From Macrostomum lignano (taxonomy: Eukaryota): a stretch of 64,000 nucleotides of DNA. A program made the position numbers and the translations under genes. The notes under the pieces are model-generated. The model did not search any database, was not told the DNA's origin, and saw only the letters and a program-made list of their open reading frames with translations. The stretch is taken from assembly GCA_002269645.1 (NCBI GenBank), contig NIVC01001661.1, forward strand, positions 62,001-126,000, in the 5' to 3' direction. Below are positions 36,460 to 56,514 of the stretch, piece by piece (positions within the stretch are counted from its first letter, which is position 1; every line of letters begins with the position of its first letter).

Positions 36460-36495
36460 GCGAAGAAGGCCCTGCCCAGTTGATAGAATTAGTTT

Positions 36496-38660: not shown

Positions 38661-38910
38661 ATCCAATTGGCCTATTGTTCAATAGCCCAATTAATCAGAG
38701 TCCTCACCGGAGGTGATGTACTCATCTAAAAATAACCCTTTCTTTCAAAATAGATTTTTCGGCCCTCGGCCTTGGTTTAGGGGGGGGGGGTGTACCTGGA
38801 GTGAGTTGGAATTCTGGACTACAGTATGGCTAGAACAGGACTTGAGCCCCCTGGTCGCATCCGCCCTGCAGGAAAGACGACCATTCACAAAAGTGTACGG
38901 TAGAGCCCAG

Positions 38911-39870
38911 TTATGCCAGCCCCGAGGCTGAGCCCCTGAGGTTGTGTGATCCTCCCCAGCTTTATCTCCCCATGTTTTAGCCCTTGGTTTTATCTTGTCA
39001 CTGGAGCCACCCAAAATTCGGAGTTGAAGGTCTCGCCTCGGTGAGCGCGCTCCACAGCCTCGGTCCACCTGCTGTCTCTTCTGGAAGTTCCCTGCCTTTG
39101 TGTCTTGGCTCTCATCTCTGACAGTGGACTAGAGTCCCGGGGAAGAGTTCGTCCGGCTGAGTCCGGGTTCCTCTTGCTCCTTGTGCCCCTCTCCAACCCC
39201 TTGGCCTGGCCTTTATACTGAGCTGGATAGCGAAAAAGCCTTGAGGCTCGCAGCCCTATAGGTAGTTTTGGTCACCTGCCTGATAGGAGACTCGCCCATC
39301 GCAATAATCTTCCCGACTCGCTCCAATAGATAAGCCTTTTCCGTAGACTAGGATATTTCCTCTCTCGGACCGCTTAAGCATTCTCCAATTGTTTAGAGCT
39401 GGTTAGTGAAAAAGCCTTGAGGCTCGCAGCCCCATAGGAGGAGCTTTGTGCAATTCGGCCTTCTGATAGGAGACTCGCCCTTGGTAAATAAGCTGCCCAG
39501 ATTCGCTCCAATCTAAAGCCTTTTCCGTAGACTTCGGGGTTTTCCCCACTCTCAGACCGCTTTTCCAAAATTTGGGAAAATTTTTGCGCGCACACTTGGG
39601 TTTTGTCGTTGGGGGGGGGGGATGGCTTGAGTGGACTCGGTCCTAGCACCGTCCCTGATTCCACTATGGGTTGGCGGTGTCTTAGTCCATAGGCTTGGGC
39701 TAGTAGCACCAATTAAGATGTTTTTCCAGGCCATGAGTCCTGGTCTCAACCTGGGCCGCTCGGGCTTTATGCCCCTGGTAGATAGGCCCCTGTAATCCAG
39801 CGGCAGAGCCCCTCCCCGGGCTGATTCGCGGGCAGCACACAGCACTGCTTCCTACCCTCGTTTCACAACA
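38911..39870. repeat. ~1-kb dispersed repeat, copy 2
   Basis: Colinear with 36496-37478; abuts the ORF end of the subfamily C element. Confidence 0.85.
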
Positions 39871-42690
39871 AGCTTGGAGACTGCGGGCGACCAGCCGAAG
39901 GCATAGGAAGGTCGGGTGCGTAAGAAAGTTTGCGGTGCACCCGTACAGTGCTCTCACCCACGTATTGCGGCTCCAGTGGATGCAATGGAGCGCAAGCTGA
40001 CGCTGAAGGCTGCGGATGACGCTCTCGGCGAGCCCGACAGCACGCAGGATAGTGTTGTTGTGCGGTGACAAAGAGCCAAGCGCACGACACACACCCTCCA
40101 AGAAGGGACTCCCACTGACATGAGCAACCAGTCAGAGCCCCGGGGGCCCCTGGACTCAGGCCTTAAATGGGAACGACCAATGGTCCGCACAAGCACAGAC
40201 CTTCCGAAGATACGCCGCCCGCCCAGCCAGACAACCTCGTTCGTGTCCTGCGCCTCCGCGGCCAGCGGGGAAGACAAGGACATCACAAGACACAGACGCG
40301 GCAAATGTAAGGGCCGTAGGTGTGTCTGCGGCAAGCGTAATTCTCGAGATGGCGCGGTATTTTCGCGAGTAGGTAGCCGGGCCGGTCTCCGTGTTTTGAC
40401 TTCGATCAGCATGTGCCGTCTTCGGGCCGGGTCATCCATGCTGATTTTGGGACGTAGGCCAGAGCCAGCAGCACATCTTGGTCGCTGAGCAACGTCGCAG
40501 TCGCGCACGCCTTTTGAATGGCGCCCGCGATCGCGCTGACGACGCCGACGTGGTGATCCCTCCGTGGTGCACACGACAGGCGCCAAGGACGTGGCCGAGA
40601 GTCTCCGACTCCGTGCCGCATCGCCTGCAGCGGGCGTCGGCTGTCGGGTCAGCAAGCCGCCGCATCGCATTTTTCGGAATGAGGTTGAGGCGGGTTCGTT
40701 GTACAAAGCGCCAATCACATACGCGCATCCCGGTGCTATTGAACAGCCAAGTGTGTCGGTCGATGTGCATCACCGTCGTCGCGAAGCAGCCCTTGGAGCG
40801 GCATTGGCGCCATGCGGCCGTGTGCGCCGATCGGACAACCTCGTGCAGCTTGCACGTAGCCGCGCTGATCCGGTGGAGCTGCTCGACCGCCCCAGACAGC
40901 GGGTGCCGCCACTCCAAACGCAGAGTCCAGTTTTGTTCGATGGGGAGCTTCAGGTCGAGCGGCTGCAGGACCTCTCGGACAGCGTGGCGCACTTGAAACC
41001 ACCAGATGGATGTCTCACCGCTTGGTGGTAGCGTCGCGCCATTCAGGAAGTCGGTGACGTCACGGTAGCTCGGTCGAGGCAATGTCGCGCAGTATCTCGT
41101 CGCTGCCTTCTGGATGGCGGCTTCCTCTTTGAGCAGCGGCAGCCCAAGGCCACCATGGAGCTTGTCGGCGTAAAGGTAGTCGACCGTCGACTCCGCTGAC
41201 AGGTAGGCGACGCGCCGGATGATCTGGCGTGCCCTCTCGTCATAGCCCTACTCCACGCGCTGTCGGCCTTGCAACTTGCGTCGCTGGTTGCCCAGCAGCG
41301 TCCAGTCGGCGTCGCGTAGCCTGAGATGAAAAGGCAGGCGGGAGACCACAAAGGTGCGGTAAGCGTTCAGCTTTTGCCATTGCAGGAGGTCACAGTTCGC
41401 CACCGCTGTGAGCTCTCGGAGCGCCCGCTCGAGTAAGGCGCCAACAGACGCAGAACGTCGTTCACCTGCCGGGACGCCCAGGTACTCGTAAGTCTCGTCC
41501 TCGGTAAGGTTCCGGATGGGGCCCGCAGCGACCTGTAGATCCGCCTCCTCGGCCGGGCCGCCGTTGATGGTAACGCGGCCGCACTTGCCCGGGTTGATGG
41601 TGAGGCCTGCCCAGTCTGCTGCCTTGTCAACCGCCGCGACCACGCGCCGAAGAGCGGCCCCGCTGCTCGTGACGAACGCCGCGTCATCAGCGTACGCAAG
41701 GCTGAGCTGATGGTGTCCATGCAGTAGGTAGCCGTCGACAGGATCCGGCGCACGAAGGAGGGGCTCCATGCATAACGCGAAAAGGACTCCCGAGAGGGGG
41801 CAGCCCTGGCGCACTCCGCTTTCAACCGGAATATCGGGGGTGACGCGGTCTTCGCCGGCATGTATAGCGGTCACGTTCTCCGCGGAAATGTCCCAAAAGA
41901 GCGCTAAGGTGTCTCCGTCCATTTCCGCCCGCTCCAGGGATCCAAATAGCAGGTCGTGAGGCACACTGGTGAAGGCGTCACGGAGGTCTAGGAAGGCAGC
42001 GTCCAGCGTCACCTTGCGGCGTCATGCGTCGTCGCGGCAGGCGCGCAGCACGTAGTTGTGGTCGGCGAAACCTTCATAGTGGAGGCCTCCGCGCTGCCTC
42101 GGGCTGATGAGCTCCGCCAAAGTCGCCCATTGTAGAACACGCTCGATTAGAACCGCCGCAAAGATTTTATTGATGGTGTCCAGCAGAGTTATTGGGCGCC
42201 ATTTGGATAGGTCAGATTCCTGCCCGGCCTCATACCTGTCCGGCTTTTTGAATAGTAACACCGTGCGGTACCGTTTTCAGGTTGACATCTGCTGGAGTAA
42301 TTGGCTCCGCCGTAAAGGTGTCGCGGCAAGCAGGAGCGGGCCGGTGGGCGGTCGGGCAGTCTTGTAGCCCACGATCTGCATAGCGTTGTCGAAAGTCGGT
42401 GTCGATGTCCGCAATGGGCACAGCGCATTCAATGCGCAATGTTCCGCATCGCGCGCTTTCGATTTTTTTGCGTAGCGAGCCGCCAGACTGGTATTGGGAG
42501 AACCACACCGTCCGTGAGGCCCTCCACAACCGCGGCGCTCATCCGGGACAGCGGTGGCAACGAGGGAGTCGCAGGCCGTGCAAAACTCAGGCCATGCTCG
42601 CTCGTCGTCCTCAGGCAGGTCGTTGAGGGCAGCGCAGCAGAGTTCGGCTGGCGTCAAGCCGGCTGCCGACGACTCATCAAAGCCGACGAC
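39871..42690 (-). mobile_element. Utopia-like RLE non-LTR retrotransposon, diverged subfamily C, frameshifted and 5'-truncated
   Basis: Fragmented ORFs with WRPITLLD, DLRDAF, GVRQGCPLSG, YADD, CRRCG..ETLGHV and IEVK motifs. Confidence 0.9.
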
Positions 42691-42699
42691 GAACCAAAT

Positions 42700-43006
42700 C
42701 TTGTAGCTCCGTCCAGGCAATGTCGCGCAAGATCTCATCGCTGCCTCCAAGACGCTTTAGCGCCTCGACAACCTTCTGAATGGCGGCTTCTTCTTTAAGC
42801 AGGGGCAGTCCGAGACCACTGTGACGCTTGTCGGCGTAAAGGTAGTCAATCGTCGACTCTGCTGGCAGGTGGCAGGTGGGCCCTCTCATCAAAGCCCAGC
42901 TCCGCACGCTGCCGTTCTTGCAACTTGCACCGCTGATTGCCCAGTAGCGTTCAATCGGCGTCGCGTAGTCTGAGATGGAAGGGCAGGCAGGAGACAACAA
43001 GTTAAA
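42700..43006 (-). mobile_element. Internal Utopia-like fragment (post-RT region)
   Basis: STIDYLYADKRHSGLGLPLLKEEAAIQKV..., fused to a subfamily A 3' UTR. Confidence 0.8.
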
Positions 43007-45322
43007 CAAAATGCAGAGTGGAAGATAAGTAAAAGAGGTAAAAGTAAAGGTAACAGGGTGGGCTGAGATGAGCAGAGTTTGGCAGAGTTCGGCACAAAAT
43101 CAGTGGATTTGAGGTGCGCCGGTGCAGTGCTCCACCCACGTGTTGCGGCTCCAGTGGATGCAGTGCAGCGCCAGTCGTCGCTGGAGGTGCCGGATGTCGC
43201 GCTCGCGCAGGCCTGCAGCGCGCAGGATGGCGTTGTTGAAGGGCGACCAGGCGCCCAGCGAGCCGATGCAGAAAGTGGCCAGGGCCGTTGGTGCCTCTGC
43301 GCTGAGCTGCTGCGTGATGCCGGCGTACTTCTGGCATACGGCTCGGTGCTTGCGTGGGAACGTGGCCGGCCCGACCTCGAACGGCGACTTGACTTCGATC
43401 AGGAGGCGGCGGCCTCTGTCTGGATCCATGATGCTGATGTCAGGTCGCAGTTCAGAGCCGGGAAGGACCTCCTGGTCGGTGGTGATGGTCGCGTTTGGAC
43501 GGGCCTCGCTGATGGCGGTGGCGACGGCGTTGACGATGCCGTCGTGGCGGTCTCTCTACCTGGCCGCGTGCACCGGGCAGCTGTTGATGACGTGGCCGAG
43601 CGTCTCGAAGCCGGCTCCGCAGCGGCGGCATCGCGGGTCGGATGTCGGGTCGGCCAGTCTCCGGAGTGCGTTGGTGGGCACCAGGTTGAGCCGCGCTCGG
43701 TGGATGAAGCGCCAGTCGCAGGCGCGCATGCCGGTGCTGCTGAACAGCCAGGTGTGGCTGCCGATGTGCGTGGCAGTCGTGGCGAATCGGCCTTGGGAGT
43801 GGCACCCGCGCCAGGCCGCCGTGTGCGCTGCCCTGACCGCCTGGTGAAGCCTCCGGGTGATTGCTGCCGCTCTGTCGCATCGCTGGATAGTTCCGGACAG
43901 CGGGTCGCGCCACTCCAGGCTGGCCGTCCAGTCGTTGCTGATGGTGAAGCGCAGCCCGGTCGCGTGGAGCACTTCGCGGGTGGCGTGGCGGACTTGGAAC
44001 CACCAGCTGGCCGTTTCTCCGCTGGGTGGCAGTGCTGCGCCATTGAGGAAGTCGGCGACGTCGCGAGGTCAAACAGGTGCAGCCCGGAGCCGTAGGCGGC
44101 GTTGGACCAGGCCGCGCAGTTCGGCCCAGGCTAGCTCTCTGAGCGCGGTTTCGGTGACCTTCTGGACGGCTGCCTCCTCCTTCGCTAGGGACAGGCCAAG
44201 GCCGCGGTGGCATCTGTCGGCGTAGAGGTAGTCTGTCGACGACCGCGTCGGAAGGTAGACGATGCGGTGGAGGATTTGACGTGCGCGCTCGTCGTAGCCC
44301 AGCTCCGCTCTCTGATGGCCTTGCAGTTTGCGCCTTGGGTTGCCGAGCTTCGTCCAGTCGGCGTCGCGCAGGCGGAGGTGGAATGGCAGGCGCGACGCAA
44401 TGAAGGTGTTGTAGGCGTCGAGCTTCTGCCACGGTAGCAGGTCGCTGTTCGCCACGGCCGTCAGGTCGTTGAGCGCGCGTTCCAGCAGCGCCGCCACAGA
44501 TGCAGAGCGGCGTTTGCCAGCCGGCACGCCCAGGTACTCGTAGAATTCGTCCTCTGCGAGCGCCCGGATCGCGCCTGCCTGTACGCGCAGCTGGAAGTCC
44601 TCCCCGTGCCCGCCGTTGATGGTGGGGCGGCCACACTTGTCGGGGTTGATCTCTAGGCCGGCCCAGGCTGCAGCGCGGTCGATCGCTGTCACCCTGCGCT
44701 GCAGGGCCTCGCCGCCGTTGGTTAGGAGCGCAGCGTCGTCCGCGTAGGCAAGGCTGAGTTGCCTGTGCCCAGGAGGTTGTAGCCGTCGGCCTGGTTTGGC
44801 GCACGCAGTAGCGGCTCCATGCAGAGGGCGAACAGCACTCCGGACAGCGGGCAACCTTGCCGAACACCGCTCTCAACGGGGATGTCGGCAGTCGCCTGAT
44901 CAGGGCCGGTGTACACCGCAGTAACGTTGTCGGCGTAGATGTCTTGGATGAGGGCCTGTGTGACTGCGTCTAGGCTGCCTCGCTCGAGCTGGCCGAACAT
45001 GAGGTCATGCAGGACGCTTGTGAAGGCGTCGCGGAGGTCCACGAAGGCGGCGTCGAGGACGGCTTTGCGGCGGCGCGCGTCGTCGCGGCAAGCTCTCAGA
45101 ACATAATTGTGGTCGGCGCAGCCTTCGTACTGGAGTCCGCCACGTTGTTCTGGGCTGATCAGGTCGGCGTCGGACGCCCACCGCGTGACCCGCTCCGCCA
45201 GGATGGCTGCCAGGATCTTGTAGCACGTGTCCAGCAGGGTGATGGGCCGCCATTTGGACAGGTCGGATTCTTGGCCGGCGATGTACCGGTCCGGCTTCTT
45301 GAACAGCAGGATGGTGCGGTAT
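43007..45322 (-). mobile_element. Utopia-like subfamily A copy, truncated at both ends
   Basis: RT through RLE (LRPDI..IEVK) with frameshifts; near-identical to the corresponding part of 45590-49840. Confidence 0.92.
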
Positions 45323-45437
45323 TCTAAGGTATTCTACCTTCTTCCTACCACCCAAAGGACCACTGTACATAGCTATGTACATGTACACTACTACTTGATA
45401 CTACTATGGCTCCGCCTTCAATATTTTAGATATCTTA

Positions 45438-45589
45438 GATGCGCAGATCCTTGCTGTACTGCAGCGCAAGGCCTACGCGTGGACCAGGTCGTGTGAACAC
45501 GAAGCACTGGTCCGACTCATCAAAAACCGGATTAATTACTTAGTAGACCAATGGCCTACGTTAGAGGAATTAATCTCTAAAGAACAGAT
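45438..45589 (-). ncRNA. U2: U2 snRNA 3' half (target site downstream of the element), with 110-nt 3' flank at 45328-45437
   Basis: Begins ATCTGTTCTT; folds as stems IIa, IIb, III and IV, with loop IV GCTGCAGTACA. Confidence 0.9.
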
Positions 45590-46001
45590 CGAAAGGCCCT
45601 GCCCGTCGGCCGAGTATCCGACGGTCGGGCAATATATTTAAGCATTTAAACGATGCGATATAAGCGGAAATATTTGGCCAAGAGCCGATGATGCTACTGA
45701 AAGTAGCTAAAAACGGGTTCGCAGGATGCGTAAAACAGTAAAACATTGGAGTAAATGCAATTAAAACAGTGGGAAAAAGTGAAGGCGCAGGAGACGGGAT
45801 GGCGGCGGGGATAAGCGCGAGAGGCGGAATCGCAGCGAAAAATGCTTACAGAGTGCGTGTACTACGAGATAGTAAAAAGTAAAATATTAAAGAAAAACAA
45901 AGTAAAACAAAAATGCAGAGTGGAAGATAAATAAAAGAGGTAAAAGTAAAGGTAACAGGGTGGGCTGAGATGAGCAGAGTTTGGCAGAGTTCGGCACAAA
46001 A

Positions 46002-49000
46002 TCAGTGGATTTGAGGTGCGCCGGTGCAGTGCTCCACCCACGTGTTGCGGCTCCAGTGGATGCAGTGCAGCGCCAGTCGTCGTTGGAGGTGCCGGATGTC
46101 GCGCTCGCGCAGGCCTGCAGCGCGCAGGATGGCGTTGTTGAAGGGCGACCAGGCGCCCAGCGAGCCGATGCAGAACGTGGCCAGGGCCGTTGGCGCCTCT
46201 GCGCTGAGCTGCTGCGTGATGCCGGCGTACTTCTGGCATACGGCTCGGTGCTTGCGTGGGAACGTGGCCGGCCCGACCTCGAACGGCGACTTGACTTCGA
46301 TCAGGAGACGGCGGCCTCTGTCTGGATCCATGATGCTGATGTCAGGTCGCAGATCAGAGCCGGGAAGGACCTCCTGGTCGGTGGTGATGGTCGCGTTTGG
46401 GCGGGCCTCGCTGATAGCGGTGGCGACGGCGTTGACGATGCCGTCGTGGCGGTCTCTCCACCTGGCCGCGTGCACCGGGCAGCTGTTGATCACGTGGCCG
46501 AGCGTCTCAACGCCGGCTCCGCAGCGGCGGCATCGCGGGTCGGATGTCGGTTCGGCCAGTCTCCGGAGTGCGTTGGTGGGCACCAGGTTGAGCCGCGCTC
46601 GGTGGATGAAGCGCCAGTCGCAGGCGCGCATGCCGGTGCTGCTGAACAGCCAGGTGTGGCTGCCGATGTGCGTGGCGGTCGTGGCGAATCGGCCTTGGGA
46701 GTGGCACCCGCGCCAGGCCGCCGTGTGCGCTGCCCTGACCGCCTGGTGAAGCCTCCGGGTGATTGCTGCCGCTCTGTCGCATCGCTGGATGTTTCCGGAC
46801 AGCGGGTCGCGCCACTCCAGGCTGGCCGTCCAGTCGTTGCTGATGGTGAAGCGCAGCCCGGTCGCATGGAGCACTTTGCGGGTGGCGTGGCGGACTTGGA
46901 ACCACCAGCTGGCCGTTTCTCCGCTGGGTGGGAGTGCTGCGCCATTGAGGAAATCGGCGACGTCGCGAGGTCGGACAGGTGCAGCGCGGAGCCGTAGGCG
47001 GCGTTGGACCAGGCCGCGCAGTTCGGCCCAGGCTAGCTCTCTGAGCGCGGCGTCTGTGCAGCAGAGTCGCCTGACGGCCTCGGTGACCTTCTGGACGGCT
47101 GCCTCCTCCTTCGCTAGGGACAGGCCAAGGCCGCGGTGGCATCTGTCGGCGTAGAGGTAGTCTGTCGAGGACTGCGTCGGAAGGTAGACGATGCGGCGGA
47201 GGATTTGACGTGCGCGCTCGTCGTAGCCCAGCTCCGCTCTCTGATGCCCTTGCAGTTTGCGCCTTGGGTTGCCGAGCTTCGTCCAGTCGGCGTCGCGCAG
47301 GCGGAGGTGGAATGGCAGGCGCGACGCAATGAAGGTTTGTAGGCGTCGAGCTTCTGCCACGGTAGCAGGTCGCTGTTCGCCACGGCCGTCAGGTCGTTGA
47401 GCGCGCGTTCCAGCAGCGCCGCCACAGATGCAGAGCGGCGTTCGCCGGCCGGCACGCCCAGGTACTCGTAGAATTCGTCCTCTGCGAGCGCCCGGATCGC
47501 GCCTGCCTGTACGCGCAGCTGGAAGTCCTCCCCGGGCCCGCCGTTGATGGTGAGGCGGCCACACTTGTCGGGGTTGATCTCAAGTCGGCCCAGGCTGCAG
47601 CGCGGTCGATCGCTGTCACCCTGCGCTGCAGGGCCTCGCCGCTGTTGGCTAAGAGCGCAGCGTCGTCGGCGTAGGCGAGGCTGAGTTGCCTGCTGTGCCC
47701 CAGGAGGTTGTAGCCGTCAGCCTGGTTTGGCGCACGCAGTAGCGGCTCCATGCAGAGGGCGAACAGCACTCCGGACAGCGGGCACCCTTGCCGGACACCG
47801 CTCTCGACGGGGATGTCGGCAGTCGCCTGATCAGGGCCGGTGTACACCGCAGTGACGTTGTCGGCGTAGATGTCCTCGATGAGGGCCTGCGTGACTGCGT
47901 CCAGGCCGCCTCGCTCGAGCTGGCCGAACAGGAGGTCATGCGGGACGCTTGTGAAGGCGTCGCGGAGGTCCACGAAGGCGGCGTCGAGGACGGCTTTGCG
48001 GCGGCGCGCGTCGTCGCGGCATGCTCTCAGGACGTAGTTGTAGTCGGCGCAGCCTTCGTACTGGAGTCCGCCCCGTTGTCCTGGGCTGATCAGGTCGGCG
48101 TCGGACGCCCACCGCGTGACCCGCTCCGCCAGGATGGCTGCCAGGATCTTGTAGCACGTGTCCAGCAGGGTGATGGGCCGCCATTTGGACAGGTCGGATT
48201 CTTGGCCGGCGATGTACCGGTCCGGCTTCTTGAACAGCAGGATGGTGCGGTAGCTCTTCCAGCTGGGCGGGACGCGGTGGAATCGGCGCAGGCAGAGGTC
48301 GAAGATTGCGGCCAGTGCTTGTCCGGACGGGTCGGCCTTGGTCAGGTCGGAGTACCGTAGGCCGTCGTTGCCGGGCGCAGAGTCCGTCCGACCCTTGAGG
48401 GCGCGCCGTACGTCCGCTGCCGTTATCGGTTCCGCTGTGCTGAGGTCTGCGGTGGTCGCCTTTGGGATGTATGCCGCATCACTGTCCCAGTCGCGGGGTC
48501 CTCTGTCGGCGTACCTCCGGCGAAAGTCGGCTTCGACGTCAGCGAGGGGGACCGCGCATTCGACTCGGGCTTCGCCTAGGGTCTCGCGCATGGCTTCGCG
48601 ACGGTTTCTCGCGTACCGTGCGGCAAGGTTGTCGTTGTGCCTTGGTCCGCCCCTCCCTCTGCGGTTGTTCTCGGGCTGTGCGGCGATGATGAAGCTGTCG
48701 CAGGCGGTGCAGAACTCTGGCCAGGCTGTTGCGTCGTCCTCTGGTAGGTTGGCGATCGCTTGGAGGCATGCTGCCGCCGCGGCTGTGGTTGGTGCTTCTG
48801 GAGCCAAAGCCGCGGGTGCTGCTGGAGCCGCGGTTGCCGCTGGAGCCGCCGCCGATGCTGCTGCCGCCGGTGCTGCTGCTGTCGCCGCTGCCGCTGCCGC
48901 CGGTGCTGCTGCCGCCGGAGCTGCTGCTGTCGCCGCTGCCGCTGCCGCCGGTGCTGCTGCCGCCGCTGCTGCTGCTGTCGCCGCTGCTGCTTCTGCCGGT

Positions 49001-49733
49001 GCTGCTGCCGCCGGTGCTGCTGCTGTCGCCGTTGCCGCTGCCGCCGGTGCTGCTGCCGCCGGTGCTGCTGCTGTCGCCGCTGCCGCTGCCGCCGGTGCTG
49101 CTGCTGTCTCCACCACTGATGCTACTGGAGCCGCGGGAACTGCTGGTGCCGCCGACGTTACCACCGGAGCTGCTGGCGCCGCTACGGCTGCCGGTGCCGC
49201 TGGTTCGACTGCTGGTGCCGTGGCGCCCCGTCTCGTGGCGCAGAGGGCCGCGTGGCGTGCCCACCTAGCAGTGGAGAAAATCGTGTGGCAGTGCCGGCAT
49301 GCGACTGCGTTCTCCAGCTTGGCGTCAGTCCTTGGTCTGCACCTGGCGGCGTGGATGTTGCGGGCGCGTGCTGTGGCGAATTGTGCGCCGCATCTGTACG
49401 TGCACCGATGCCGCGCGTCCGTTGCTGCTTTTGCCTTGGCCGCAGCCTCGTAGTTACCGGCCGCGCGTTGCCTCTCTGCGCAGGTGTTTAAGTGCCGAGA
49501 CATGCCTTTGGCTGTCAGTGTCTTACGGCAGGCCGGGCAAACCTCCCTCGGCAGCGCTGCTCCAGACTGTCGTCTGCTGCTGGTAGCCGCTGCCTCAGTC
49601 GCTTGATTCGACGCTGTTGGGGTCGATCGAGGCTGCTGCCGCTGGGCGAGGTAGCCGAGTTCTTGCAGATGCCGGCATGGGCGTAAAGGTTGCGCTCGGA
49701 CCTAAATTGACGGCCGCACTTGCATGTGTACAT
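46002..49733 (-). CDS. Retrotransposon polyprotein (~1240 aa once three apparent 1-nt deletions are repaired): 4 CCHC fingers, Ala-rich linker, RT, CCHC knuckle, restriction-like endonuclease
   Basis: Motifs PGNDG, WRPITLLD, DLRDAFTSVPH, GVRQGCPLSG, LAYADD, YEYLG, CRRCG-ETLGHVINSC, RHD..RPDI..IEVK. Frame breaks near 49620 (inferred site), 47580 and 47340. Confidence 0.85.
48770..49220 (-). repeat. Coding gct/gcc-rich repeat giving a PAAAA-type Ala-rich linker
   Basis: Tandem gctgctgccgccggt-like units within the element ORF. Confidence 0.9.
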
Positions 49734-49840
49734 ATTCCGCCACTATAGTCGAGCAGTGGATCCAAAGGCCGAGACGGCGATGTTACTGTGAAGTGGAGCA
49801 CCCGAGGCGAAGCATGACGAGCCGAACCGAGCCGAGCCGA

Positions 49841-49865
49841 ACTACAGATCTTAGCCAATAAGGCC
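49841..49865 (-). ncRNA. U2: U2 5' fragment (nt 11-39 with AAAG deleted) at the 5' junction of the full-length element
   Basis: Minus strand GGCCTTATTGGCTAAGATC-TGTAGT versus the intact 5' half at 56476-56514. Confidence 0.85.
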
Positions 49866-50320
49866 TCTCGGACGGCGTGGCGCACTTGAAACCACTAGCT
49901 GGATGTCCCGCCGCTTGATGGTAGCGTCGCGCCATTCAGGAAGTCGGCGACGTCACGGTGTCGCACGGGGGCGGCGATTGTTAAAGCAATTTGAAGCAAA
50001 AAAGAAGGCGGGAGCGCATTTCAAAAAGATTTTAGAGGAAAAAGAATATCTGGGGATAAAAACGAGAGAGTAGAAGTAAGATAAGAGCGAAAACGAAAGG
50101 ATAGAATAGAAAAGTGAGTCGAAATGATTAAAAAGGTAAAGGAGGATGAAATAAATGATAAATAGATACATAAAATGTAAAATGTATAAGATGTAGACGG
50201 GTGAAAACAGGAGCAAAAGTCAAAGGGGAAGCAAATGGCAACGAGAGAGAAGGGCGCGTGGATACCGCGGGCGACCAGGCGAAGGCACAGGGAGGTCGGC
50301 CGCGTCAGTTTTGCATCTGA
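49866..50320 (-). mobile_element. Fused Utopia-like fragments (subfamily C-like ORF piece plus B/C-like 3' UTR)
   Basis: 49866-49958 resembles ~40970-41065; 49960-50310 resembles 52930-53250 and 39880-39920. Confidence 0.75.
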
Positions 50321-50434
50321 CGTCGGTATTCTACGTTCTTCCTACCACCCAAAGGACCACCGTACATAGCTATATACATGTACAGTACTCCTTGATACTG
50401 CCATGACTCCGCCTTCGCTATTTTAGATTTCTTA

Positions 50435-50585
50435 GATGCGCAGATCCTTGCTGTACTGCAGCGCAAGGCCTACGCGTGGACCAGGTCGTGTGAACACGAA
50501 GCACTGGTCCGACTCATCAAAAACAGGATTAATTACTTAGTAGACCAATGGCCTACGTTAGAGGAATTAATCTCTAAAGAACAGA
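50435..50585 (-). ncRNA. U2: U2 snRNA 3' half with 110-nt 3' flank (50325-50434)
   Basis: Same sequence as 45438-45589 apart from a substitution next to the Sm site and the missing junction A. Confidence 0.9.
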
Positions 50586-52158
50586 GCGAAAGGCCCTGCC
50601 CGTCGGCCGAGTATCCGACGGTCGGGCAATATATTTAAGTATTAAACACAATAAGCGATATAAGCAGAAATATTTGGCCAAGAGCCTGATGATGCTACTG
50701 AGAGTAGCTAAAAACGGGTTCGCAGGATGCGTAAAACAGTAAAACAATGAAATGCAATTAAAACAGTGGGGAAAAGTGATGGCGCAGGAGATGGGATGGC
50801 GGCAGGGATGAGCGCGAGAGGCGGAATCGCAGCGAAAATAGCTTACAGAGTGCGTGTACTACGAGATAGTAAAAAGTAAAATATTACAGAAAAACAAAGT
50901 AAAACAAAAATGCAGAGTGAAAGATGAATAAAACAGGTAAAGTCGTAAAGGTAACAGAGCGGACTGAGATGAGCAGAGTTTGGCAGAGTTCGGCACAAAA
51001 TCAGTGGATTTGAGGTGCGCCGGTGCAGTGCTCCACCCACGTGTTGCGGCTCCAGTGGATGCAGTGCAGCGCTAGTCGTCGTTGGAGGTGCCGGATGTCG
51101 CGCTCGCGCAGGCCTGCAGCGCGCAGGATGGCGTTGTTGAAGGGCGACCAGGCGCCCAGCGAGCCGATGCAGAAAGTCGCCAGGGCCGTTGGCGCCTCTG
51201 CGCTGAGCTGCTGCGTGATGCCGGCGTACTTCTGGCATACGGCTCGGTGCTTGCGTGGGAACGTGGCCGGCCCGACCTCGAACGGCGACTTGACTTCGAT
51301 CAGGAGACGGCGGCCTCTGTCTGGATCCATGATGCTGATGTCAGGTCGCAGATCAGAGCCGGGAAGGACCTCCTGGTCGGTGGTGATGGTCGCGTTTGGG
51401 CGGGCCTCGCTGATGGCGGTGGCGACGGCGTTGACGATGCCGTCGTGGCGGTCCCTCCACCTGGCCGCGTGCACCGGGCAGCTGTTGATCACGTGGCCGA
51501 GCGTCTCGACGCCGGCTCCGCAGCGGCGGCATCGCGGGTCGGATGTCGGGTCGGCCAGTCTCCGGAGCGCGTTGGTGGGCACCAGGTTGAGCCGCGCTCG
51601 GTGGATGAAGCGCCAGTCGTGGCGAATCGGCCTTGGGAGTGGCACCCGCGCCAGGCCGCCGTGTGCGCTGCCCTGACCACCTGGTGAAGCCTCCGGGTGA
51701 TTGCTGCCGCTCTGTCACAGCGCTGGATAGTTCTGGACAGCGGGTCGCGCCACTCCAGGCTGGCCGTCCAGTCGTTGCTGATGGTGAAGCGCAGCCCGGT
51801 CGCGTGGAGCACCTCGCGGGTGGCGTGGCGGACTTGGAACCACCAGCTGGCCGTTTCTCCGCTGGGTGGCAGTGCTGCGCCATTGAGGAAGTCGGCGACG
51901 TCGCGAGGTCAAACAGGTGCAGCCCGGAGCCGTAGGCGGCGTTGGACCAGGCCGCGCAGTTCGGCCCAGGCTAGCTCTCTGAGCGCGGCGTCGGTGCAGC
52001 AGAGTCGCCTGATGGCCTCGGTGACCTTCTGGACGGCTGCCTCCTCCTTCGCTAGGGACAGGCCAAGGCCGCCGTGGCATCTGTCGGCGTAGAGGTAGTC
52101 TGTCGAGGACTGCGTCGGAAGGTAGACGATGCGGCGGAGGATTTGACGTGCGCGCTCG
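50586..52158 (-). mobile_element. Utopia-like subfamily A, 5'-truncated, with a ~61-bp internal deletion near 51618
   Basis: Complete 3' UTR and RLE; the deletion is bounded by repeated cagtcg. Confidence 0.92.
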
Positions 52159-52614
52159 AAGTAGCTAAAAACGGGTTCGCAGGATGCGTAAAACAGTAAA
52201 ACATTGGAGTAAATGCAATTAAAACAGTGAGAAAAAGTGAAGGCGCAGGAGACGGGATGGCGGCGGGGATGAGCGCGAGAGGCGGAATCACAGCGAAAAA
52301 TGCTTACAGAGTGCATGAACTTCGAGACAGTAAAAAAGTAAAATATTAAAGAAAAACAAAGTAAAACAAAAATGCAGAGTGGAAGATAAATAAAACAGGT
52401 AAAAGTAAAGGTAACAGGGTGGGCCAGAGTTTGGCAAATGACAAATGCTCATGGCAAATGAGCAGAGTTTGGCAGAGTTCGGCACAAAATCAGTGGATTT
52501 GAGGTGCGCCGGTGCAGTGCTCCACCCACGTGTTGCGGCTCCAGTGGATGCAGTGCAGCGCCAGTCGTCGTTGGAGGTGCCGGATGTCGCGCTCGCGCAG
52601 GCCTGCAGCGCGCA
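52159..52614 (-). mobile_element. Short subfamily A fragment (ORF end plus partial 3' UTR)
   Basis: Matches ~45680-46110; carries a small extra insertion near 52430-52460. Confidence 0.85.
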
Positions 52615-52661
52615 CTCCTTGATACTGCCATGACTCCGCCTTCGCTATTTTAGATTTCTTA

Positions 52662-52812
52662 GATGCGCAGATCCTTGCTGTACTGCAGCGCAAGGCCTAC
52701 GCGTGGATCAGGTCGTGTGAACACGAAGCACTGGTCCGACTCATCAAAAACCGGATTAATTACTTAGTAGACCAATGGCCTACGTTAGAGGAATTAATCT
52801 CTAAAGAACAGA
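52662..52812 (-). ncRNA. U2: U2 snRNA 3' half with 48-nt flank
   Basis: Matches the other copies; one mismatch in stem III. Confidence 0.9.
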
Positions 52813-54140
52813 GCGAAAGGCCCTGCCCCTCGGACGAGCTACCGAGAGTGGGGGCAATATATTTAAGTATTAAAGGAAATTAGTAGGCGAGGACAGATGA
52901 TTGTAAAGGCGACGGCGAGCGAGGGCTCATGCAAAAGAAATAGAGCGGCGAAAGTTAAAGCAAATTGAGCAGAATAAAGCGTTTCAAAAGACTTTTAGAA
53001 GACAACGGGAAGCGGGATAAAAAGGGGAGTGGCAGTAAAAGCAGACGAAAACAAAAGGATGAAATAAAAAAGAAATAAAATAAAATAGACCAAAATGGAT
53101 AAAAAAAGGATGGGTGAGAGAGTATTAAATGCAAAATAGATAAATGAGATATAAAGGTGGTGAAAACAGGCGCGGACGTCCCAAAAGGAGCAACGGGCAA
53201 TAATTGGGGTCAGAAAGCGCGGAGACCCAAAACGGTCAGGCGAAGGCACAGGCACAGGTGCATCAGAAAGTTTGCGGGGCGCCCGTGCAGTGCTCCACCC
53301 ACGAATTGCGGCTCCAGTGGATGCAGTGGAGCGCAAGCTGGCGCTGGAGGCTGCGAATGACGCGCTCGGCGAGCCCGGCCGCACGCAGGATGGTGTTGTT
53401 GTGCGGCGACCAGGAGCCAAGCGCTCCGACACAAAGAGTCGCCAGGGCCGTAGGTGCGTCCTCCTTCAGCCGCTGGGTCAGGCCAGCGTATTTCTCGCAG
53501 ACGGCCCGGTGCTTACGCGAATAGGTAGTCGGGCCGGCCTCCATCGGTGTCTTGACTTCGATCAGCAGGCGCCGTCCTCGAGCCGGGTCCTCGACGCTGA
53601 TGTCGGGACGGAGGCCAGAACCAGGCAGCACCTCCTGATCGTTGAGCACCGTCGCAGTCGGACAGGCCTTCTGGATGGCACCGGCGATCGCGCTGACGAC
53701 GCCGTCGTGGCGGTCTCTCCATCGTCCCGCATGCACAGGGCAGGCGCTAAGGACATGACCGAGGGTCTCCGCCTCAGCGCCGCATCGCCTGCAGCGGGCG
53801 TCGGCTGTCGGGTCAGCGAGCCGCCGCGTCGCATTCGTTGGAATGAGGTTGAGGCGGGCGCGATGTACGAAGCGCCAGTCACACACGCGCATCCCGGTGC
53901 TGTTGAACAGCCAGGTGTGCCCGCCGATGTGTGTCGCCGTCGTCGCGAAGCGGCCCTGGGAGCGGCATTGCCGCCACGCCGATGTGTGCGCCGATCTGAC
54001 GACCTCGTGCAGCTTGCGCGTGGCCGCGCTGATCCGTTGGAGCTGCTCGACCGCCCCAGACAGCGGGTGCCGCCACTCCAGACGCACAGTCCAGTCCTGC
54101 TCAATGCGGAACTTCAGGTCGAGCGGTTGCAGCACTTCTC
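52813..54140 (-). mobile_element. Utopia-like subfamily B, 5'-truncated
   Basis: Distinct 3' UTR; ORF CRRCGAEAETLGHVLSAC..LRPDISVEDP..IEVKTP..HCTGAPQTF*; same U2 junction as subfamily A. Confidence 0.92.
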
Positions 54141-54160
54141 GAGCGGTCGAGCGGTTGCAG

Positions 54161-55249
54161 CGCCACTCCAGGCTGGCCGTCCAGTCGTTGCTGATGGTGA
54201 AGCGCAGCCCGGTCGCGTGGAGCACCTCGCGGGTGGCGTGGCGGACTTGGAACCACCAGCTGGCCGTTTCTCCGCTGGGTGGCAGTGCTGCGCCATTGAG
54301 GAAGTCGGCGACGTCGCGAGGTCAAACAGGTGCAGCCCGGAGCCGTAGGCGGCGTTGGACCAGGCCGCGCAGTTCGGCCCAGGCTAGCTCTCTGAGCGCG
54401 GCGTCGGTGCAGCAGAGTCGCCTGATGGCCTCGGTGACCTTCTGGACGGCTGCCTCCTCCTTCGCTAGGGACAGGCCAAGGCCGCCGTGGCATCTGTCGG
54501 CGTAGAGGTAGTCTGTCGAGGACTGCGTCGGAAGGTAGACGATGCGGCGGAGGATTTGACGTGCGCGCTCGAAGTAGCTAAAAACGGGTTCGCAGGATGC
54601 GTAAAACAGTAAAACATTGGAGTAAGCAATTAAAACAGTGAGAAAAAGTGAAGGCGCAGGAGACGGGATGGCGGCGGGGATGAGCGCGAGAGGCGGAATC
54701 ACAGCGAAAAATGCTTACAGAGTGCATGAACTTCGAGACAGTAAAAAAGTAAAATATTAAAGAAAAACAAAGTAAAACAAAAATGCAGAGTGGAAGATAA
54801 ATAAAACAGGTAAAAGTAAAGGTAACAGGGTGGGCCAGAGTTTGGCAAATGACAAATGCTCATGGCAAATGAGCAGAGTTTGGCAGAGTTCGGCACAAAA
54901 TCAGTGGATTTGAGGTGCGCCGGTGCAGTGCTCCACCCACGTGTTGCGGCTCCAGTGGATGCAGTGCAGCGCCAGTCGTCGTTGGAGGTGCCGGATGTCG
55001 CGCTCGCGCAGGCCTGCAGCGCGCACTCCTTGATACTGCCATGACTCCGCCTTCGCTATTTTAGATTTCTTAGATGCGCAGATCCTTGCTGTACTGCAGC
55101 GCAAGGCCTACGCGTGGATCAGGTCGTGTGAACACGAAGCACTGGTCCGACTCATCAAAAACCGGATTAATTACTTAGTAGACCAATGGCCTACGTTAGA
55201 GGAATTAATCTCTAAAGAACAGAGCGAAAGGCCCTGCCCCTCGGACGAG
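54161..55249. repeat. Near-identical duplicate of 51748-52838
   Basis: Same chimeric junctions and same private insertion; offset 2413 bp, then 2411 bp after a 2-nt indel. Confidence 0.92.
55073..55223 (-). ncRNA. U2: U2 snRNA 3' half (inside the duplicated block)
   Basis: Matches 52662-52812. Confidence 0.9.
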
Positions 55250-56472
55250 TATCCGACGGTCGGGCAATATATTTAAGTATTTAAACGATGCGATATAAGC
55301 GGAAATATTTGGCCAAGAGCCGATGATGCTACTGAGAGTAGCTAAAAACAGGTTCGCAGGATGCGTAAAACAGTAAAACAATGAAATAAATGCAATTAAA
55401 ACAGTGGGAAAAAGTGAAGGCGCAGGAGACGGGATGGTGGCAGGGATGAGCGCGAGAGGCGGAATCGCAGCGAGAATAGCTAACAGAGTGCATGAACTTC
55501 GAGACAGTAAAAAGTAAAATATTAAAGAAAAACAAAGTAAAACAAAAATGCAGAGTGAAAGATGAATAAAACAGGTAAAAGTAAAGGTAACAGGGTGGGC
55601 TGAGATGAGCAGAGTTTGGCAGAGTTCGGCACTAAATCAGTGGATTTGAGGTGCGCCGGTGCAGTGCTCCACCCACGTGTTGCGGCTCCAGTGGATGCAG
55701 TGCAGCGCCAGTCGTCGTTGGAGGTGCCGGATGTCGCGCTCGCGCAGGCCTGCAGCGCGCAGGATGGCGTTGTTGAAGGGCGACCAGGCACCCAGCGAGC
55801 CGATGCAGAAAGTCGCCAGGGCCGTTGGTGCCTCTGCGCTGAGCTGCTGCGTGATGCCGGCGTACTTCTGGCATACGGCTCGGTGCTTGCGTGGGAACGT
55901 GGCCGGCCCGACCTCGAACGGCGACTTGACTTCGATCAGGAGACGGCGGCCTCTGTCTGGATCCATGATGCTGATGTCAGGTCGCAGATCAGAGCCGGGA
56001 AGGACCTCCTGGTCGGTGGTGATGGTCGCGTTTGGGCGGGCCTCGCTGATGGCGGTGGCGACGGCGTTGACGATGCCGTCGTGGCGGTCCCTCCACCTGG
56101 CCGCGTGCACCGGGCAGCTGTTGATCACGTGGCCGAGCGTCTCGACGCCGGCTCCGCAGCGGCGGCATCGCGGGTCGGATGTCGGGTCGGCCAGTCTCCG
56201 GAGTGCGTTGGTGGGCACCAGGTTGAGCCGCGCTCGGTGGATGAAGCGCCAGTCGCAGGCGCGCATGCCGGTGCTGCTGAACAGCCAGGTGTGGCTGCCG
56301 ATGTGCGTGGCAGTCGTGGCGAATCGGCCCTGGGAGTGGCACCCGCGCCAGGCCGCCGTGTGCGCTGCCCTGACCACCTGGTGAAGCCTCCGGGTGATTG
56401 CTGCCGCTCTGTCACAGCGCTGGATAGTTCTGGACAGCGGGTCGCGCCACTCCAGGCTGGCCGTCCAGTCGT
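55224..56472 (-). mobile_element. Utopia-like subfamily A, 5'-truncated, directly joined to the U2 5' half
   Basis: 3' UTR plus knuckle/RLE ORF (55637-56377); three extra bases (ttg) separate it from U2 nt 39. Confidence 0.93.
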
Positions 56473-56475
56473 CAA

Positions 56476-56514
56476 ACTACACTTTGATCTTAGCCAATAA
56501 GGCCGAGAAGCGAT
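56476..56514 (-). ncRNA. U2: U2 snRNA 5' end (39 nt), with unique AT-rich upstream DNA
   Basis: ATCGCTTCTCGGCCTTATTGGCTAAGATCAAAGTGTAGT: the conserved metazoan U2 5' end including stem I and most of the GUAGUA branch-point recognition sequence. Confidence 0.96.

What the first reader, a model, noticed from the sequence alone, without database searches (positions are those of the whole stretch)
45328..49865. Unit shaped like a retrocopy of a whole U2::element chimeric transcript
Seen: on the minus strand the unit reads U2 nt 11-39 (AAAG deleted), full element, U2 3' half, 110-nt flank. Upstream is another element fragment, not U2 promoter DNA. Inference: the element is transcribed from the U2 promoter as a U2-element-U2 RNA, and nearly all of that RNA was copied, so the host snRNA pieces travel as cargo.
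Basis: partly seen in the sequence, partly recalled or inferred. Interest (0 to 1): 0.7.

Follow-up and report, generated by a model that had tools for sequence, protein, structure and literature searches.

The report
U2-gene retrotransposon copy carrying U2 pieces
The unit is a full-length but broken copy of a retrotransposon that inserts only into U2 snRNA genes, and it sits in a 20-kb pile of such copies in a way best (not conclusively) explained if element RNA that still carried U2 sequence at both ends was copied back into DNA.

Summary
On the minus strand the order is: U2 nt 11-39 lacking AAAG (49865-49841), a 4.25-kb element (49840-45590), U2 nt 40 to its end (45589-45434), and a 106-nt U2 downstream flank (45433-45328). 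Upstream lies a fragment of a second element family, not promoter DNA.

The element is an R2-like non-LTR retrotransposon with RT, a CCHC finger and a restriction-like endonuclease. It sits at the U2 site used by the known Utopia family. This copy has frameshifts.

The unit is one block of a head-to-tail pile at 56.5-36.3 kb. Every piece has the same orientation. The pile lies between a single promoter-bearing U2 5' end (56514-56476) and a degenerate U2 3' half (about 36459-36334). Four further "element + U2 3' half + short flank" blocks lie inside it, and their flanks stop at +44 or +106. Two unrelated junctions use the very same +106 base.

A clock test shows that the unit's flank is not a local duplicate of its neighbour's flank.

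Best reading (confidence about 0.45): the blocks are cDNAs of read-through co-transcripts re-inserted into an occupied U2 site, with template switching. Rival readings are a local U2 paralog cluster with deletions, DNA-level duplication (shown for one 1.1-kb part), and a long target-site duplication.

The parts
56476..56514 (-). The only promoter-bearing U2 5' end in the window: U2 nt 1-39, with AT-rich native DNA upstream. It is the 5' edge of the whole pile.
   Evidence: It is followed by a TTG filler (56475-56473) and a 5'-truncated family-A copy.
55025..56472 (-). Block I: family-A copy truncated at its 5' end (homologous to 46837-45590), then C, then the U2 3' half (55223-55069), then the first 44 nt of flank (55068-55025).
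52614..55024 (-). Block II: A 3'-UTR piece (55024-54573), A internal piece (54578-54160), a 15-nt stutter, the family-B 3' part with its full 3' UTR (54141-52813), the U2 3' half (52812-52658), and 44 nt of flank.
   Evidence: The stretch 55284-54160 equals 52874-51747 at 99.1% identity.
50325..52613 (-). Block III: the same A 3'-UTR piece, then an A copy from the position homologous to 47227 to its 3' end (with a 61-nt deletion), the U2 3' half (50585-50431), and 106 nt of flank (50430-50325).
49866..50324 (-). Mosaic directly upstream of the unit: a 10-nt filler GACGTCAGAT; then a B-like piece running from about 20 nt before the stop codon through the 3' UTR but lacking the last ~120 nt (to about 49983); then a ~117-nt internal B fragment (49982-49866).
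49841..49865 (-). U2 leader: U2 nt 11(-13) to 39 with AAAG deleted, joined precisely to the first base of the element.
45590..49840 (-). Full-length family-A element. In order: 5' UTR; C-x2-C-x12-H-x4-C zinc fingers; an Ala/Pro-rich repeat; RT; a CCHC finger plus PD..ExK restriction-like endonuclease; a T-rich 3' UTR (about 410 nt) with a terminal hairpin. The reading frame is broken by frameshifts.
   Evidence: Pfam RVT_1, E 1.9e-22. R2 proteins in PDB: RT E 2e-32, C-terminal part E 1.5e-8 with RPD...EVK aligned. Frames. Hairpin.
45434..45589 (-). U2 3' part, nt 40 to the end, including the Sm site and the 3' stem-loops.
   Evidence: Rfam RF00004, 85.9 bits. One difference in 155 nt from the other copies.
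45328..45433 (-). 106-nt U2 downstream flank, a variant that differs at 11/106 positions from the flank at 50430-50325.
36461..45327 (-). Block V: TTAGAA stutter; an A copy homologous to 48252-45900 (45321-42999); B-like fragments (42988-39892); then a different GC-moderate element, 'C' (39871-36461), that ends in the same terminus GGGCAGGGCCTTCTTCG.
36334..36460 (-). Degenerate U2 3' half (80% identity, internal deletions and an insertion). AT-rich native DNA follows within about 150 nt. It is the 3' edge of the pile.

Best explanation
What the element is. It is a U2-snRNA-gene-specific, R2-like non-LTR retrotransposon of the Utopia kind. Its protein nicks U2 DNA between nt 39 and 40 and reverse-transcribes the element RNA directly onto the nick (target-primed reverse transcription).

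Proposed mechanism.
1. As with R2 in rRNA genes, I infer that the element has no promoter of its own. It would then be expressed as part of a longer transcript that begins in or upstream of the U2 5' part. That transcript runs through the element, the U2 3' half and a short way into the downstream flank, ending about 44 or 106 nt past the gene.
2. At an intact U2 gene, the U2 tail of such an RNA would pair with the target, and only the element would be copied.
3. In this locus the U2 gene was already occupied. New cDNAs were therefore started at the very 3' end of read-through RNAs and stacked one after another into the same site.
4. Each event added a block of the form 'element (often 5'-truncated or chimeric) + U2 3' half + flank'.
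5. For the reported unit, reverse transcription ran through the whole element and on into the U2 leader. At about nt 11-13 it switched, at a GG microhomology, to fragments of family-B RNA.
6. The U2 pieces flanking the unit are therefore cargo, that is, 5' and 3' transduction of the host gene.

Shown directly: the anatomy, the junction sequences, the single promoter, the uniform orientation, the shared +106 end, and the separate origin of the unit's flank.

Inferred: that the copying went through RNA, where the RNA starts, and whether re-insertion used the upstream U2 half-site or template jumps.
For: 1. Identity of the element. RVT_1. RT and CCHC/RLE match R2 proteins. Five 3' junctions read ...GGGCAGGGCCTT(C)T(T)CG + A/C + TCTGTTCTT, at the published Utopia site (PMC4640811). 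A 41%-identical relative on an unrelated contig also abuts a U2 3' part.

2. One U2 gene only. There is a single U2 5' end with native AT-rich DNA. No other copy of that upstream DNA exists in the window. The GC-rich pile runs without any AT-rich spacer down to a degenerate U2 3' half, after which AT-rich DNA resumes.

3. Orientation. All fragments over 20 kb share one orientation; no inverted match was found.

4. Discrete flank ends. The flank ends at +106 in two blocks that continue into unrelated sequence (50325: GACGTCAGAT + B'; 45328: T+TAGAA+TACC... A copy). At 45328 the last 9 nt are used twice, as expected for repeated initiation at an RNA 3' end. A third junction lies at +44.

5. Junction style. 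The junctions carry fillers (TTG, 10 nt), 1-5-nt microhomologies and stutters, as at R2 5' junctions and R2 RT template jumps (PMC3774820).

6. Clock test. The unit's flank differs from its neighbour's at 11/106 positions. If the two were a pair made when the unit inserted, about 5% substitution per lineage is needed. Under that rate the unit's 770- and 525-codon open frames stay stop-free with P about 0.004. At an age of 2% or less, P(11 or more differences) is at most 0.004. The flank therefore came from elsewhere.

7. Precedent for the leader. Processed R2 RNAs retain up to 36 nt (most often 28 nt) of upstream 28S sequence. Copies with duplicated leaders joined by microhomology are known, and junction deletions are inherited through the RNA (PMC3774820).
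Against: - There is no RNA data. The RNA 3' ends at +44 and +106 and the start at the U2 promoter are inferred.
- The +106 coincidence rests on only two junctions.
- The U2 3' half is much better conserved than its surroundings: 1/155 differences, against 11/106 in the flank (p = 3e-4) and 24/413 in the 3' UTR (p = 0.005). This is what one expects if each U2 3' half was part of a functional gene until it was hit, i.e. target-derived. A cargo model has to add a recent donor or gene conversion to explain it.
- Part of the pile was certainly duplicated after its junctions were made: 1.13 kb at 99.1% identity spans two junctions. So DNA-level processes, or copying of composite RNA, also shaped the locus.
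- Many fragments are truncated at their 3' ends, which simple target-primed insertion does not produce.
- No ribozyme or other processing signal was found at U2 nt 11.
- No second full-length copy was available to check whether the leader recurs.
- The relative locus L001 shows stacked fragments but no duplicated U2 3' halves.
Confidence: 0.45

Rival explanations
1. A local cluster of U2 paralogs, altered only at the DNA level. Each U2 3' half plus flank is the remnant of its own U2 gene. Elements inserted canonically, and the unit is a normal full-length insertion. Upstream target DNA (promoter, U2 5' part, spacer) was then lost, either at integration of 5'-truncated copies or later by deletion and unequal crossing-over. 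This is how Kojima and Jurka read the Phytophthora arrays.
For: - The unit has a perfect nt 39 | element | nt 40 structure.
- The U2 3' halves are far better conserved than the flank or 3' UTR, as expected for genes that were functional until hit.
- The unit's flank is a distinct variant, as expected for a paralog.
- Disrupted U2 genes without 5' parts are reported for Utopia in Phytophthora and Nasonia (PMC4640811).
- DNA-level duplication is demonstrable here (99.1% over 1.13 kb).
Against: - Not one base of AT-rich spacer, and no second promoter copy, survives between five U2 3' halves.
- Two independent losses would have had to stop at the same flank base, +106.
- Family-B fragments sit exactly where the promoter and U2 nt 1-10 of the supposed gene should be. 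That is not a target site for these elements.
- The pile is bracketed by one U2 5' end and one degenerate U2 3' half.
Confidence: 0.25
2. Exceptionally long target-site duplication. The top strand is cut 199 or 261 bp downstream of the bottom-strand nick, at flank +44 or +106. Each insertion then duplicates U2 nt 40 to its end plus the flank and rebuilds an intact U2 gene upstream, which is hit again. In this model the U2 leader in the unit is still RNA-derived, but the U2 3' half and flank are target DNA.
For: - The flank ends are discrete.
- U2+flank divergence rises in ladder fashion with distance from the promoter: c55 = c52; 2/199 to c50; 12/261 to c45; c36 very diverged.
- Phytophthora Utopia copies have intact U2 genes upstream (PMC4640811).
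- From my own knowledge: the rDNA element R9 makes a 126-bp duplication.
- The +44 site GGAGT|ACTGT resembles the U2 nick site GTAGT|ATCTGT.
Against: - The clock test rejects the unit's flank and its upstream neighbour's flank as a pair made at the unit's insertion.
- The flank of the terminal U2 3' half is not significantly similar to flank types 1 or 2 (p = 0.59 and 0.08).
- Two 5' junctions in the same pile lie at U2 nt 39 with no duplication at all.
Confidence: 0.08
3. Break repair by replicative DNA template switching. Double-strand breaks made by the element's endonuclease at this U2 site would be repaired by copying from element/U2 loci elsewhere, with several microhomology-mediated switches. 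This gives a same-orientation mosaic without an RNA intermediate. Unequal sister-chromatid exchange would then expand it.
For: Microhomologies and stutters at the junctions; imported flank variants; a tandem 2.2-2.4-kb periodicity; and a 99.1% duplicate.
Against: It gives no reason for the repeated +106 end or for uniform orientation over about 15 junctions. A reverse transcriptase of the R2 type, known for end-to-end template jumps, is encoded on the spot. The U2 nt 39 | element junction inside the mosaic is most simply explained by a transcript.
Confidence: 0.1
4. Assembly artefact. A collapsed or mis-joined assembly of several U2/element loci could have produced chimeric junctions.
For: The region is highly repetitive, with near-identical 1.1-kb segments. 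Read support could not be inspected.
Against: The junctions show biologically typical fillers and microhomologies. Copies differ by 2-10% in a consistent way. The pile has clean native borders.
Confidence: 0.04

Closest known systems
Utopia (U2 snRNA gene-targeting non-LTR retrotransposons of the NeSL clade; Kojima & Jurka 2015, PMC4640811)
   Same: - Single ORF with N-terminal zinc fingers, RT, and a C-terminal zinc finger plus restriction-like endonuclease.
- Insertion at the same U2 position, with downstream U2 starting at (A)TCTGTTCTT.
- Precise 3' junctions and variable 5' junctions.
- Several diverged families co-resident in U2 DNA.
- Many more U2 3' halves than 5' halves.
- Tandem and stacked copies.
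   Different: - The 3' terminus was not found among the published junction sequences.
- No RNase H domain, unlike oomycete Utopia.
- The best protein relative is only 41% identical.
- Here the extra U2 3' halves carry a flank with a discrete end and lie inside a single U2 gene. One full-length copy carries a U2 leader next to non-U2 DNA. The paper read such halves as destroyed genes with deleted 5' parts; it did not consider retro-copied U2 pieces.
R2 (28S rDNA-specific RLE retrotransposon)
   Same: - Protein architecture and sequence similarity.
- No promoter of its own; co-transcribed with the host gene.
- Processed RNA in many species keeps up to 36 nt (most often 28 nt) of upstream host sequence. 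The leader here is 27-29 nt.
- 5' junctions formed by microhomology, with fillers, deletions and duplicated leaders.
- Junction deletions propagated through the RNA (PMC3774820).
- From my own knowledge: the R2 RT makes end-to-end template jumps.
   Different: - The target is U2, not 28S.
- No Myb domain was detected.
- No HDV-like ribozyme was found at the leader start.
- As far as I know, R2 copies do not carry the downstream 28S sequence plus flank as repeated cargo.
LINE-1 5' and 3' transduction
   Same: Read-through or upstream-initiated transcripts carry flanking host DNA to the new site, so the cargo reveals the donor locus.
   Different: L1 uses an AP-type endonuclease and poly(A) tails, and inserts at dispersed sites with short duplications. 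Here there is no poly(A). The cargo is the target gene itself, and the landing site is the same, already occupied, specific site.
Keno (U2-specific, AP-endonuclease non-LTR element)
   Same: The same U2 insertion point (PMC4640811).
   Different: Keno has an AP-like endonuclease. This element has a restriction-like endonuclease.

Membership tests
Utopia | 3' end abuts U2 snRNA gene sequence at the specific site, with downstream U2 beginning about nt 39-41 ((A)TCTGTTCTT) | tested here: met
   Five 3' junctions in the window and one in the 41%-identical relative on L001. Compared with the text of PMC4640811.
Utopia | Restriction-like (PD..D/ExK) endonuclease with a preceding zinc finger, C-terminal to RT; not an AP endonuclease | tested here: met
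   CRRCGAGVETLGHVINSC followed by RPD...IEVK aligns to the R2 RLE region, E 1.5e-8. No Exo_endo_phos hit.
Utopia | Non-LTR RT domain in a single ORF with one to three N-terminal zinc fingers | tested here: met
   RVT_1, E 1.9e-22. R2 RT, E 2e-32. Four C-x2-C-x12-H-x4-C motifs are visible in the translations. The ORF is frameshifted in this copy.
Utopia | No Myb domain (the criterion used to separate Utopia from R2 in PMC13188248) | tested here: inconclusive
   No Myb hit in Pfam at E <= 0.01. However, the N-terminal region is frameshifted and low-complexity, so a weak domain could be missed.
Utopia | RT groups with Utopia/NeSL in a phylogeny | not testable with these tools
   No Repbase Utopia protein sequences were available. 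The paper's supplements hold only junction DNA.
Utopia, oomycete lineage | Archaeal-type RNase H domain upstream of RT | tested here: not met
   No RNase H family was found in the 704-aa ORF. The region upstream of RT holds zinc fingers and an Ala/Pro repeat.
R2 | Insertion at the conserved 28S rDNA site | tested here: not met
   All junctions are with U2. No rRNA hit in the window.
R2 | HDV-like self-cleaving ribozyme spanning the 5' junction | tested here: inconclusive
   No Rfam ribozyme hit at E <= 10 in 49300-50000. The fold is not unusually stable (z = +1.9). My own P1/P3/L3/P1.1 descriptor search found no candidate cleaving at U2 nt 8-16. Divergent ribozymes could escape these searches.
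Keno | AP-like endonuclease N-terminal to RT | tested here: not met
   No AP endonuclease domain. An RLE is present instead.

The most novel reading that the evidence does not exclude
A U2-specific retrotransposon keeps re-entering one already sacrificed U2 gene. To do so it uses the surviving upstream half-site and cDNAs primed at the end of read-through co-transcripts. Each event then adds a retro-copied U2 3' half (Sm site and 3' stem-loops) plus about 100 nt of flank, and sometimes a roughly 28-nt U2 leader.

If so, most 'disrupted U2 genes' counted in genomes that carry Utopia would be cargo copies rather than destroyed genes. That would explain how several families persist on a handful of target genes.

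A further possibility is that the well-conserved U2 3' tail is a working part of the element RNA, serving in target pairing or in snRNP-type stabilisation or import.
Probability: 0.35. Interest if true: 0.7.

Novelty: new variant of a known kind. Interest (0 to 1): 0.55.

Why it matters
Utopia elements are known, but how they are expressed is not. It is also unknown how several families survive on roughly ten U2 genes, and the 2015 description called this "not well understood". That paper could not explain why only U2 3' halves, never 5' halves, flank the copies.

This locus offers a concrete and testable answer. The elements would be co-transcribed with U2, as R2 is with rRNA. Read-through RNAs would be copied together with their U2 tail into an already dead U2 gene, so the host loses one gene rather than many.

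The locus also supplies natural examples of multi-template cDNAs for an R2-type reverse transcriptase. This enzyme class is now being engineered for site-specific gene insertion, where tail design and template jumping matter.

If the DNA-only explanation is right, the locus is an ordinary decayed Utopia nest.

Tried and rejected
1. Ribozyme that would set the leader's start at nt 11. An Rfam scan of 49300-50000 at E <= 10 gave only a chance viral stem-loop hit. The minimum-free-energy fold is not unusual. Two descriptor searches for P1/P3/L3/P1.1 found nothing credible. Not supported, but not excluded.

2. More copies from the same organism. A full-ORF protein search was swamped by the Ala-rich repeat. 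The RT-only search gave a best hit of 41%. An exact U2 pattern found nothing in the metagenome collection. A protein-guided scan gave only about 25%-identical elements.

3. More distant RT relatives (L002-L005). They have no U2 nearby, and some carry AP endonucleases. They were dropped as uninformative.

4. Long target-site duplication. Attractive at first, but rejected for this unit by the clock test and by the lack of similarity to the terminal flank.

5. An older U2 remnant inside the element's 5' UTR (TCTCGGCCTT at 49774-49765). The local alignment gives p about 0.013 only. Kept as a note, not used as evidence.

6. Published Utopia 3' ends. No match to this terminus.

7. Full historical reconstruction of all roughly 15 junctions. 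Abandoned, because several orders of events fit the data.

Full report
**What is there**

Rfam finds four U2 snRNA matches on the minus strand: 45434-45614, 50431-50611, 52658-52838 and 55069-55249. In each, only the part from about nt 40 onward is truly U2. The first ~25 aligned bases are a shared non-U2 sequence...GGGCAGGGCCTTTCG. A fifth, degenerate copy lies at about 36459-36334.

Reading the minus strand from 49865 gives, in order:
- GGCCTTATTGGCTAAGATCTGTAGT (49865-49841);
- a 4251-nt GC-rich element (49840-45590);
- U2 from nt 40 to its end (45589-45434);
- 106 nt of flank (45433-45328).

The window's only native U2 5' end is at 56514-56476, ATCGCTTCTCGGCCTTATTGGCTAAGATCAAAGTGTAGT, preceded by AT-rich DNA. 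Against it, the piece in front of the element is U2 nt 11-39 lacking AAAG. U2 is split precisely between nt 39 and 40. Only these two U2 5' pieces exist in the window.

**What the element is**

The long frames encode the following:
- an RT (Pfam RVT_1, E 1.9e-22), which matches solved R2 proteins at E 2e-32;
- a C-terminal CCHC finger and a PD..ExK restriction-like endonuclease, which align to the same region of R2 at E 1.5e-8;
- upstream, four C-x2-C-x12-H-x4-C fingers and an Ala/Pro-rich tandem repeat.

No AP endonuclease, RNase H or Myb domain was detected. The copy is full-length but not coding-competent, because its domains lie in three different frames.

The 3' UTR ends in a hairpin that is conserved between two families through a compensatory change.

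The architecture, together with the insertion point, matches the Utopia family described by Kojima and Jurka (PMC4640811). The terminus is not among their published junctions. The closest protein found is only 41% identical. That relative, on an unrelated 1.2-Mb contig, also abuts a U2 3' part that starts at CTGTTCTT. U2 specificity is therefore a property of the lineage. More distant RT hits are not next to U2.

**The surroundings change the picture**

A self-comparison of 35.5-57.5 kb shows that the unit is one block in a 20-kb pile of fragments. The fragments come from two diverged families, A and B (about 70-75% identical to each other), plus a third element, C. All have the same orientation, and no inverted match exists.

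The pile begins at the promoter-bearing U2 nt 1-39 (56514-56476). It ends at the degenerate U2 3' half (about 36459-36334), after which AT-rich DNA resumes. No AT-rich spacer and no second copy of the U2 upstream region occur inside it.

Read 5' to 3' on the minus strand, the blocks are:
- **Block I:** U2 nt 39 | TTG | A, 5'-truncated, to its 3' end | U2 3' half | flank +44.
- **Block II:** A 3'-UTR piece | A internal piece | stutter | B 3' part | U2 3' half | flank +44.
- **Block III:** the same two A pieces, continuing to the A 3' end | U2 3' half | flank +106.
- **Block IV:** 10-nt filler | B-like 3'-UTR piece | B internal fragment | U2 nt 11-39 (minus AAAG) | full A | U2 3' half | flank +106.
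- **Block V:** stutter | A, 5'- and 3'-truncated | B fragments | C | degenerate U2 3' half.

**Junctions**
- The left edge of the unit is GAGAGG|CCTTATT, with GG shared between family B and U2 nt 11-12.
- The right edge is ...GGTAGAATACC, then T + TAGAA, then TACC-GCACC... TACC is shared between the flank end and the A copy, and the last 9 nt of the flank are in effect used twice.
- The flank of block III stops at the very same base (...GTAGAATACC) but continues GACGTCAGAT + B'.
- Other junctions have a 3-nt filler, 1-5-nt microhomologies or a 15-nt stutter.

These features are typical of R2 5' junctions and of template switching (PMC3774820).

**Divergence**

Differences between the unit and the copies c50 and c55:

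| Region | Differences | Per cent |
|---|---|---|
| ORF, 3' part | 16/836 | 1.9% |
| 3' UTR | 24/413 | 5.9% |
| U2 3' half | 1/155 | 0.6% |
| Flank | 11/106 | 10% |

Seven of the 11 flank differences fall in its first 44 nt. By Fisher's exact test, U2 versus flank gives p = 3e-4 and U2 versus UTR gives p = 0.005. The flanks of c50, c52 and c55 are identical over their first 44 nt.

**Weighing the mechanisms**

*(a) A local cluster of U2 paralogs whose promoters, 5' parts and spacers were deleted.* This is the published reading for Phytophthora. It explains the perfect nt 39/40 split, the well-kept U2 3' halves and the distinct flank variant. It does not explain three things: why no spacer or promoter remnant survives four times over; why two independent losses stop at the same base; and why family-B fragments sit where the promoter and nt 1-10 should be.

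*(b) A very long target-site duplication, with the top strand cut at +44 or +106.* This explains the discrete ends and would rebuild the U2 gene each time. It also fits the rising U2+flank divergence with distance from the promoter. However, 11/106 differences between the unit's flank and its neighbour's would need about 5% substitution per lineage since the unit inserted. The unit's 770- and 525-codon frames would then remain stop-free with P about 0.004. At an age of 2% or less, P(11 or more differences) is at most 0.004. In addition, the flank of the terminal U2 3' half is not significantly similar to the others. Two 5' junctions also lie at nt 39 with no duplication.

*(c) cDNA of read-through co-transcripts.* This accounts for the imported flank variant, for the shared and twice-used +106 end (an RNA 3' end), and for the uniform orientation. 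It also explains the single promoter, the excess of U2 3' halves, the mosaic of same-sense fragments (template jumps), and a U2 leader fused precisely to the element yet joined to non-U2 DNA.
- The leader has a direct precedent. Processed R2 RNAs keep up to 36 nt (most often 28 nt) of upstream 28S sequence. Leader duplications joined by microhomology occur, and junction deletions are inherited through the RNA. The leader here is 27-29 nt and carries a 4-nt deletion.
- Re-use of an occupied site is plausible, because R2 proteins position themselves on DNA upstream of the nick (PMC13188248; otherwise from my own knowledge of R2 biochemistry).
- Weak points: there is no RNA evidence; only two junctions define +106; the U2 part is better conserved than a neutral cargo should be; and no ribozyme or other signal was found at nt 11.

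*(d) DNA-level processes certainly contributed.* The segment 55284-54160 equals 52874-51747 at 99.1% identity and spans two illegitimate junctions. These junctions were therefore copied together, either by tandem duplication and unequal exchange or by copying of a composite transcript.

**Verdict**

The thing is real, and it is a new member of the Utopia kind.
- The U2 leader travelling with the element RNA holds in every cDNA-based model. I put it at about 0.6-0.7.
- The claim that the whole unit, including the U2 3' half and flank, is one retro-copied transcript I put at about 0.4-0.45.

The unit is not a clean, isolated retrocopy. It has no target-site duplication, its two sides are unrelated, and its 5' side continues into further switched fragments. 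Transcription from the U2 promoter is plausible by analogy with R2 but is untested.

**What could not be done**

No other genomic copies from this organism were reachable. The decisive survey of leaders and flank ends, and any RNA evidence, therefore remain open.

Noticed in passing
window 677-27674: The first 28 kb is a chain of at least 15 different micro- and minisatellite arrays. Examples: (AGTT) about 270 copies at 677-1757; (GATA) about 680 copies at 7665-10403; and 19- to 34-nt units in arrays of 0.4-1.9 kb at 4724-5663, 11749-13139, 14398-15104, 16595-17433, 17995-18849, 19221-21079, 21806-22438, 23465-24120, 24920-25604, 25911-26325 and 27106-27674. So many unrelated arrays side by side is unusual.
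   Followed up: no
window 36461-39871 (minus strand): A third element, 'C', has about 50% GC, no recognisable ORF, and an internal 815-nt repeat (39871-39057 versus 37480-36654, 79% identity). It ends in GGGCAGGGCCTTCTTCG directly on a U2 3' half. Only its last ~17 nt are shared with families A and B. It may be a non-autonomous passenger of the same machinery.
   Followed up: partly
window 45590-45630, 50587-50627, 52814-52855, 55225-55265 (minus strand): A conserved 3'-terminal hairpin lies just before the terminus. Family A has CCGUCGG/CCGACGG; family B has CUCUCGG/CCGAGGG, with a compensatory G-C to C-G change. Fold z-scores are -2.5 to -3.0. The copy at 55.2 kb has an A-type 5' arm with a B-type 3' arm, i.e. 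a recombinant within the loop. This is probably the RNA handle that the RT recognises.
   Followed up: partly
window 49765-49774 (minus strand): The element's own 5' UTR contains TCTCGGCCTT, identical to U2 nt 7-16, inside ATCGCCGTCTCGGCCTTTGGATC, which loosely resembles U2 nt 1-29. It may be the remnant of an older captured U2 leader, but the shuffle test gives only p about 0.013.
   Followed up: partly
window 45589 vs 50586, 52813, 55224, 36460: The base between the element terminus and TCTGTTC is A (the native U2 nt 40) only in the reported unit. It is C in the four other copies. Either the nick position or an added base differs between events.
   Followed up: no
window 48836-49106: A 48-nt (also 15/33-nt) tandem repeat encodes an Ala/Pro/Thr-rich tract between the zinc fingers and the RT. 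It swamped the first protein search.
   Followed up: no
L001:3187-12148: In the unrelated contig that carries the 41%-identical relative, several diverged, same-orientation RT/RLE fragments are stacked upstream of a single U2 3' part. Stacking in one U2 site therefore recurs elsewhere, but there without duplicated U2 3' halves.
   Followed up: partly
window 50383-50361 and 45386-45364 (flank +48 to +70, minus strand): The U2 downstream flank contains an inverted repeat, GTACAT...ATGTAC. A similar motif (TAGTGTGCACGCACTAGCTA) lies about 100 nt downstream of the degenerate U2 3' half at about 36249-36230. It may be a conserved 3'-end or termination signal of U2 genes in this organism.
   Followed up: no
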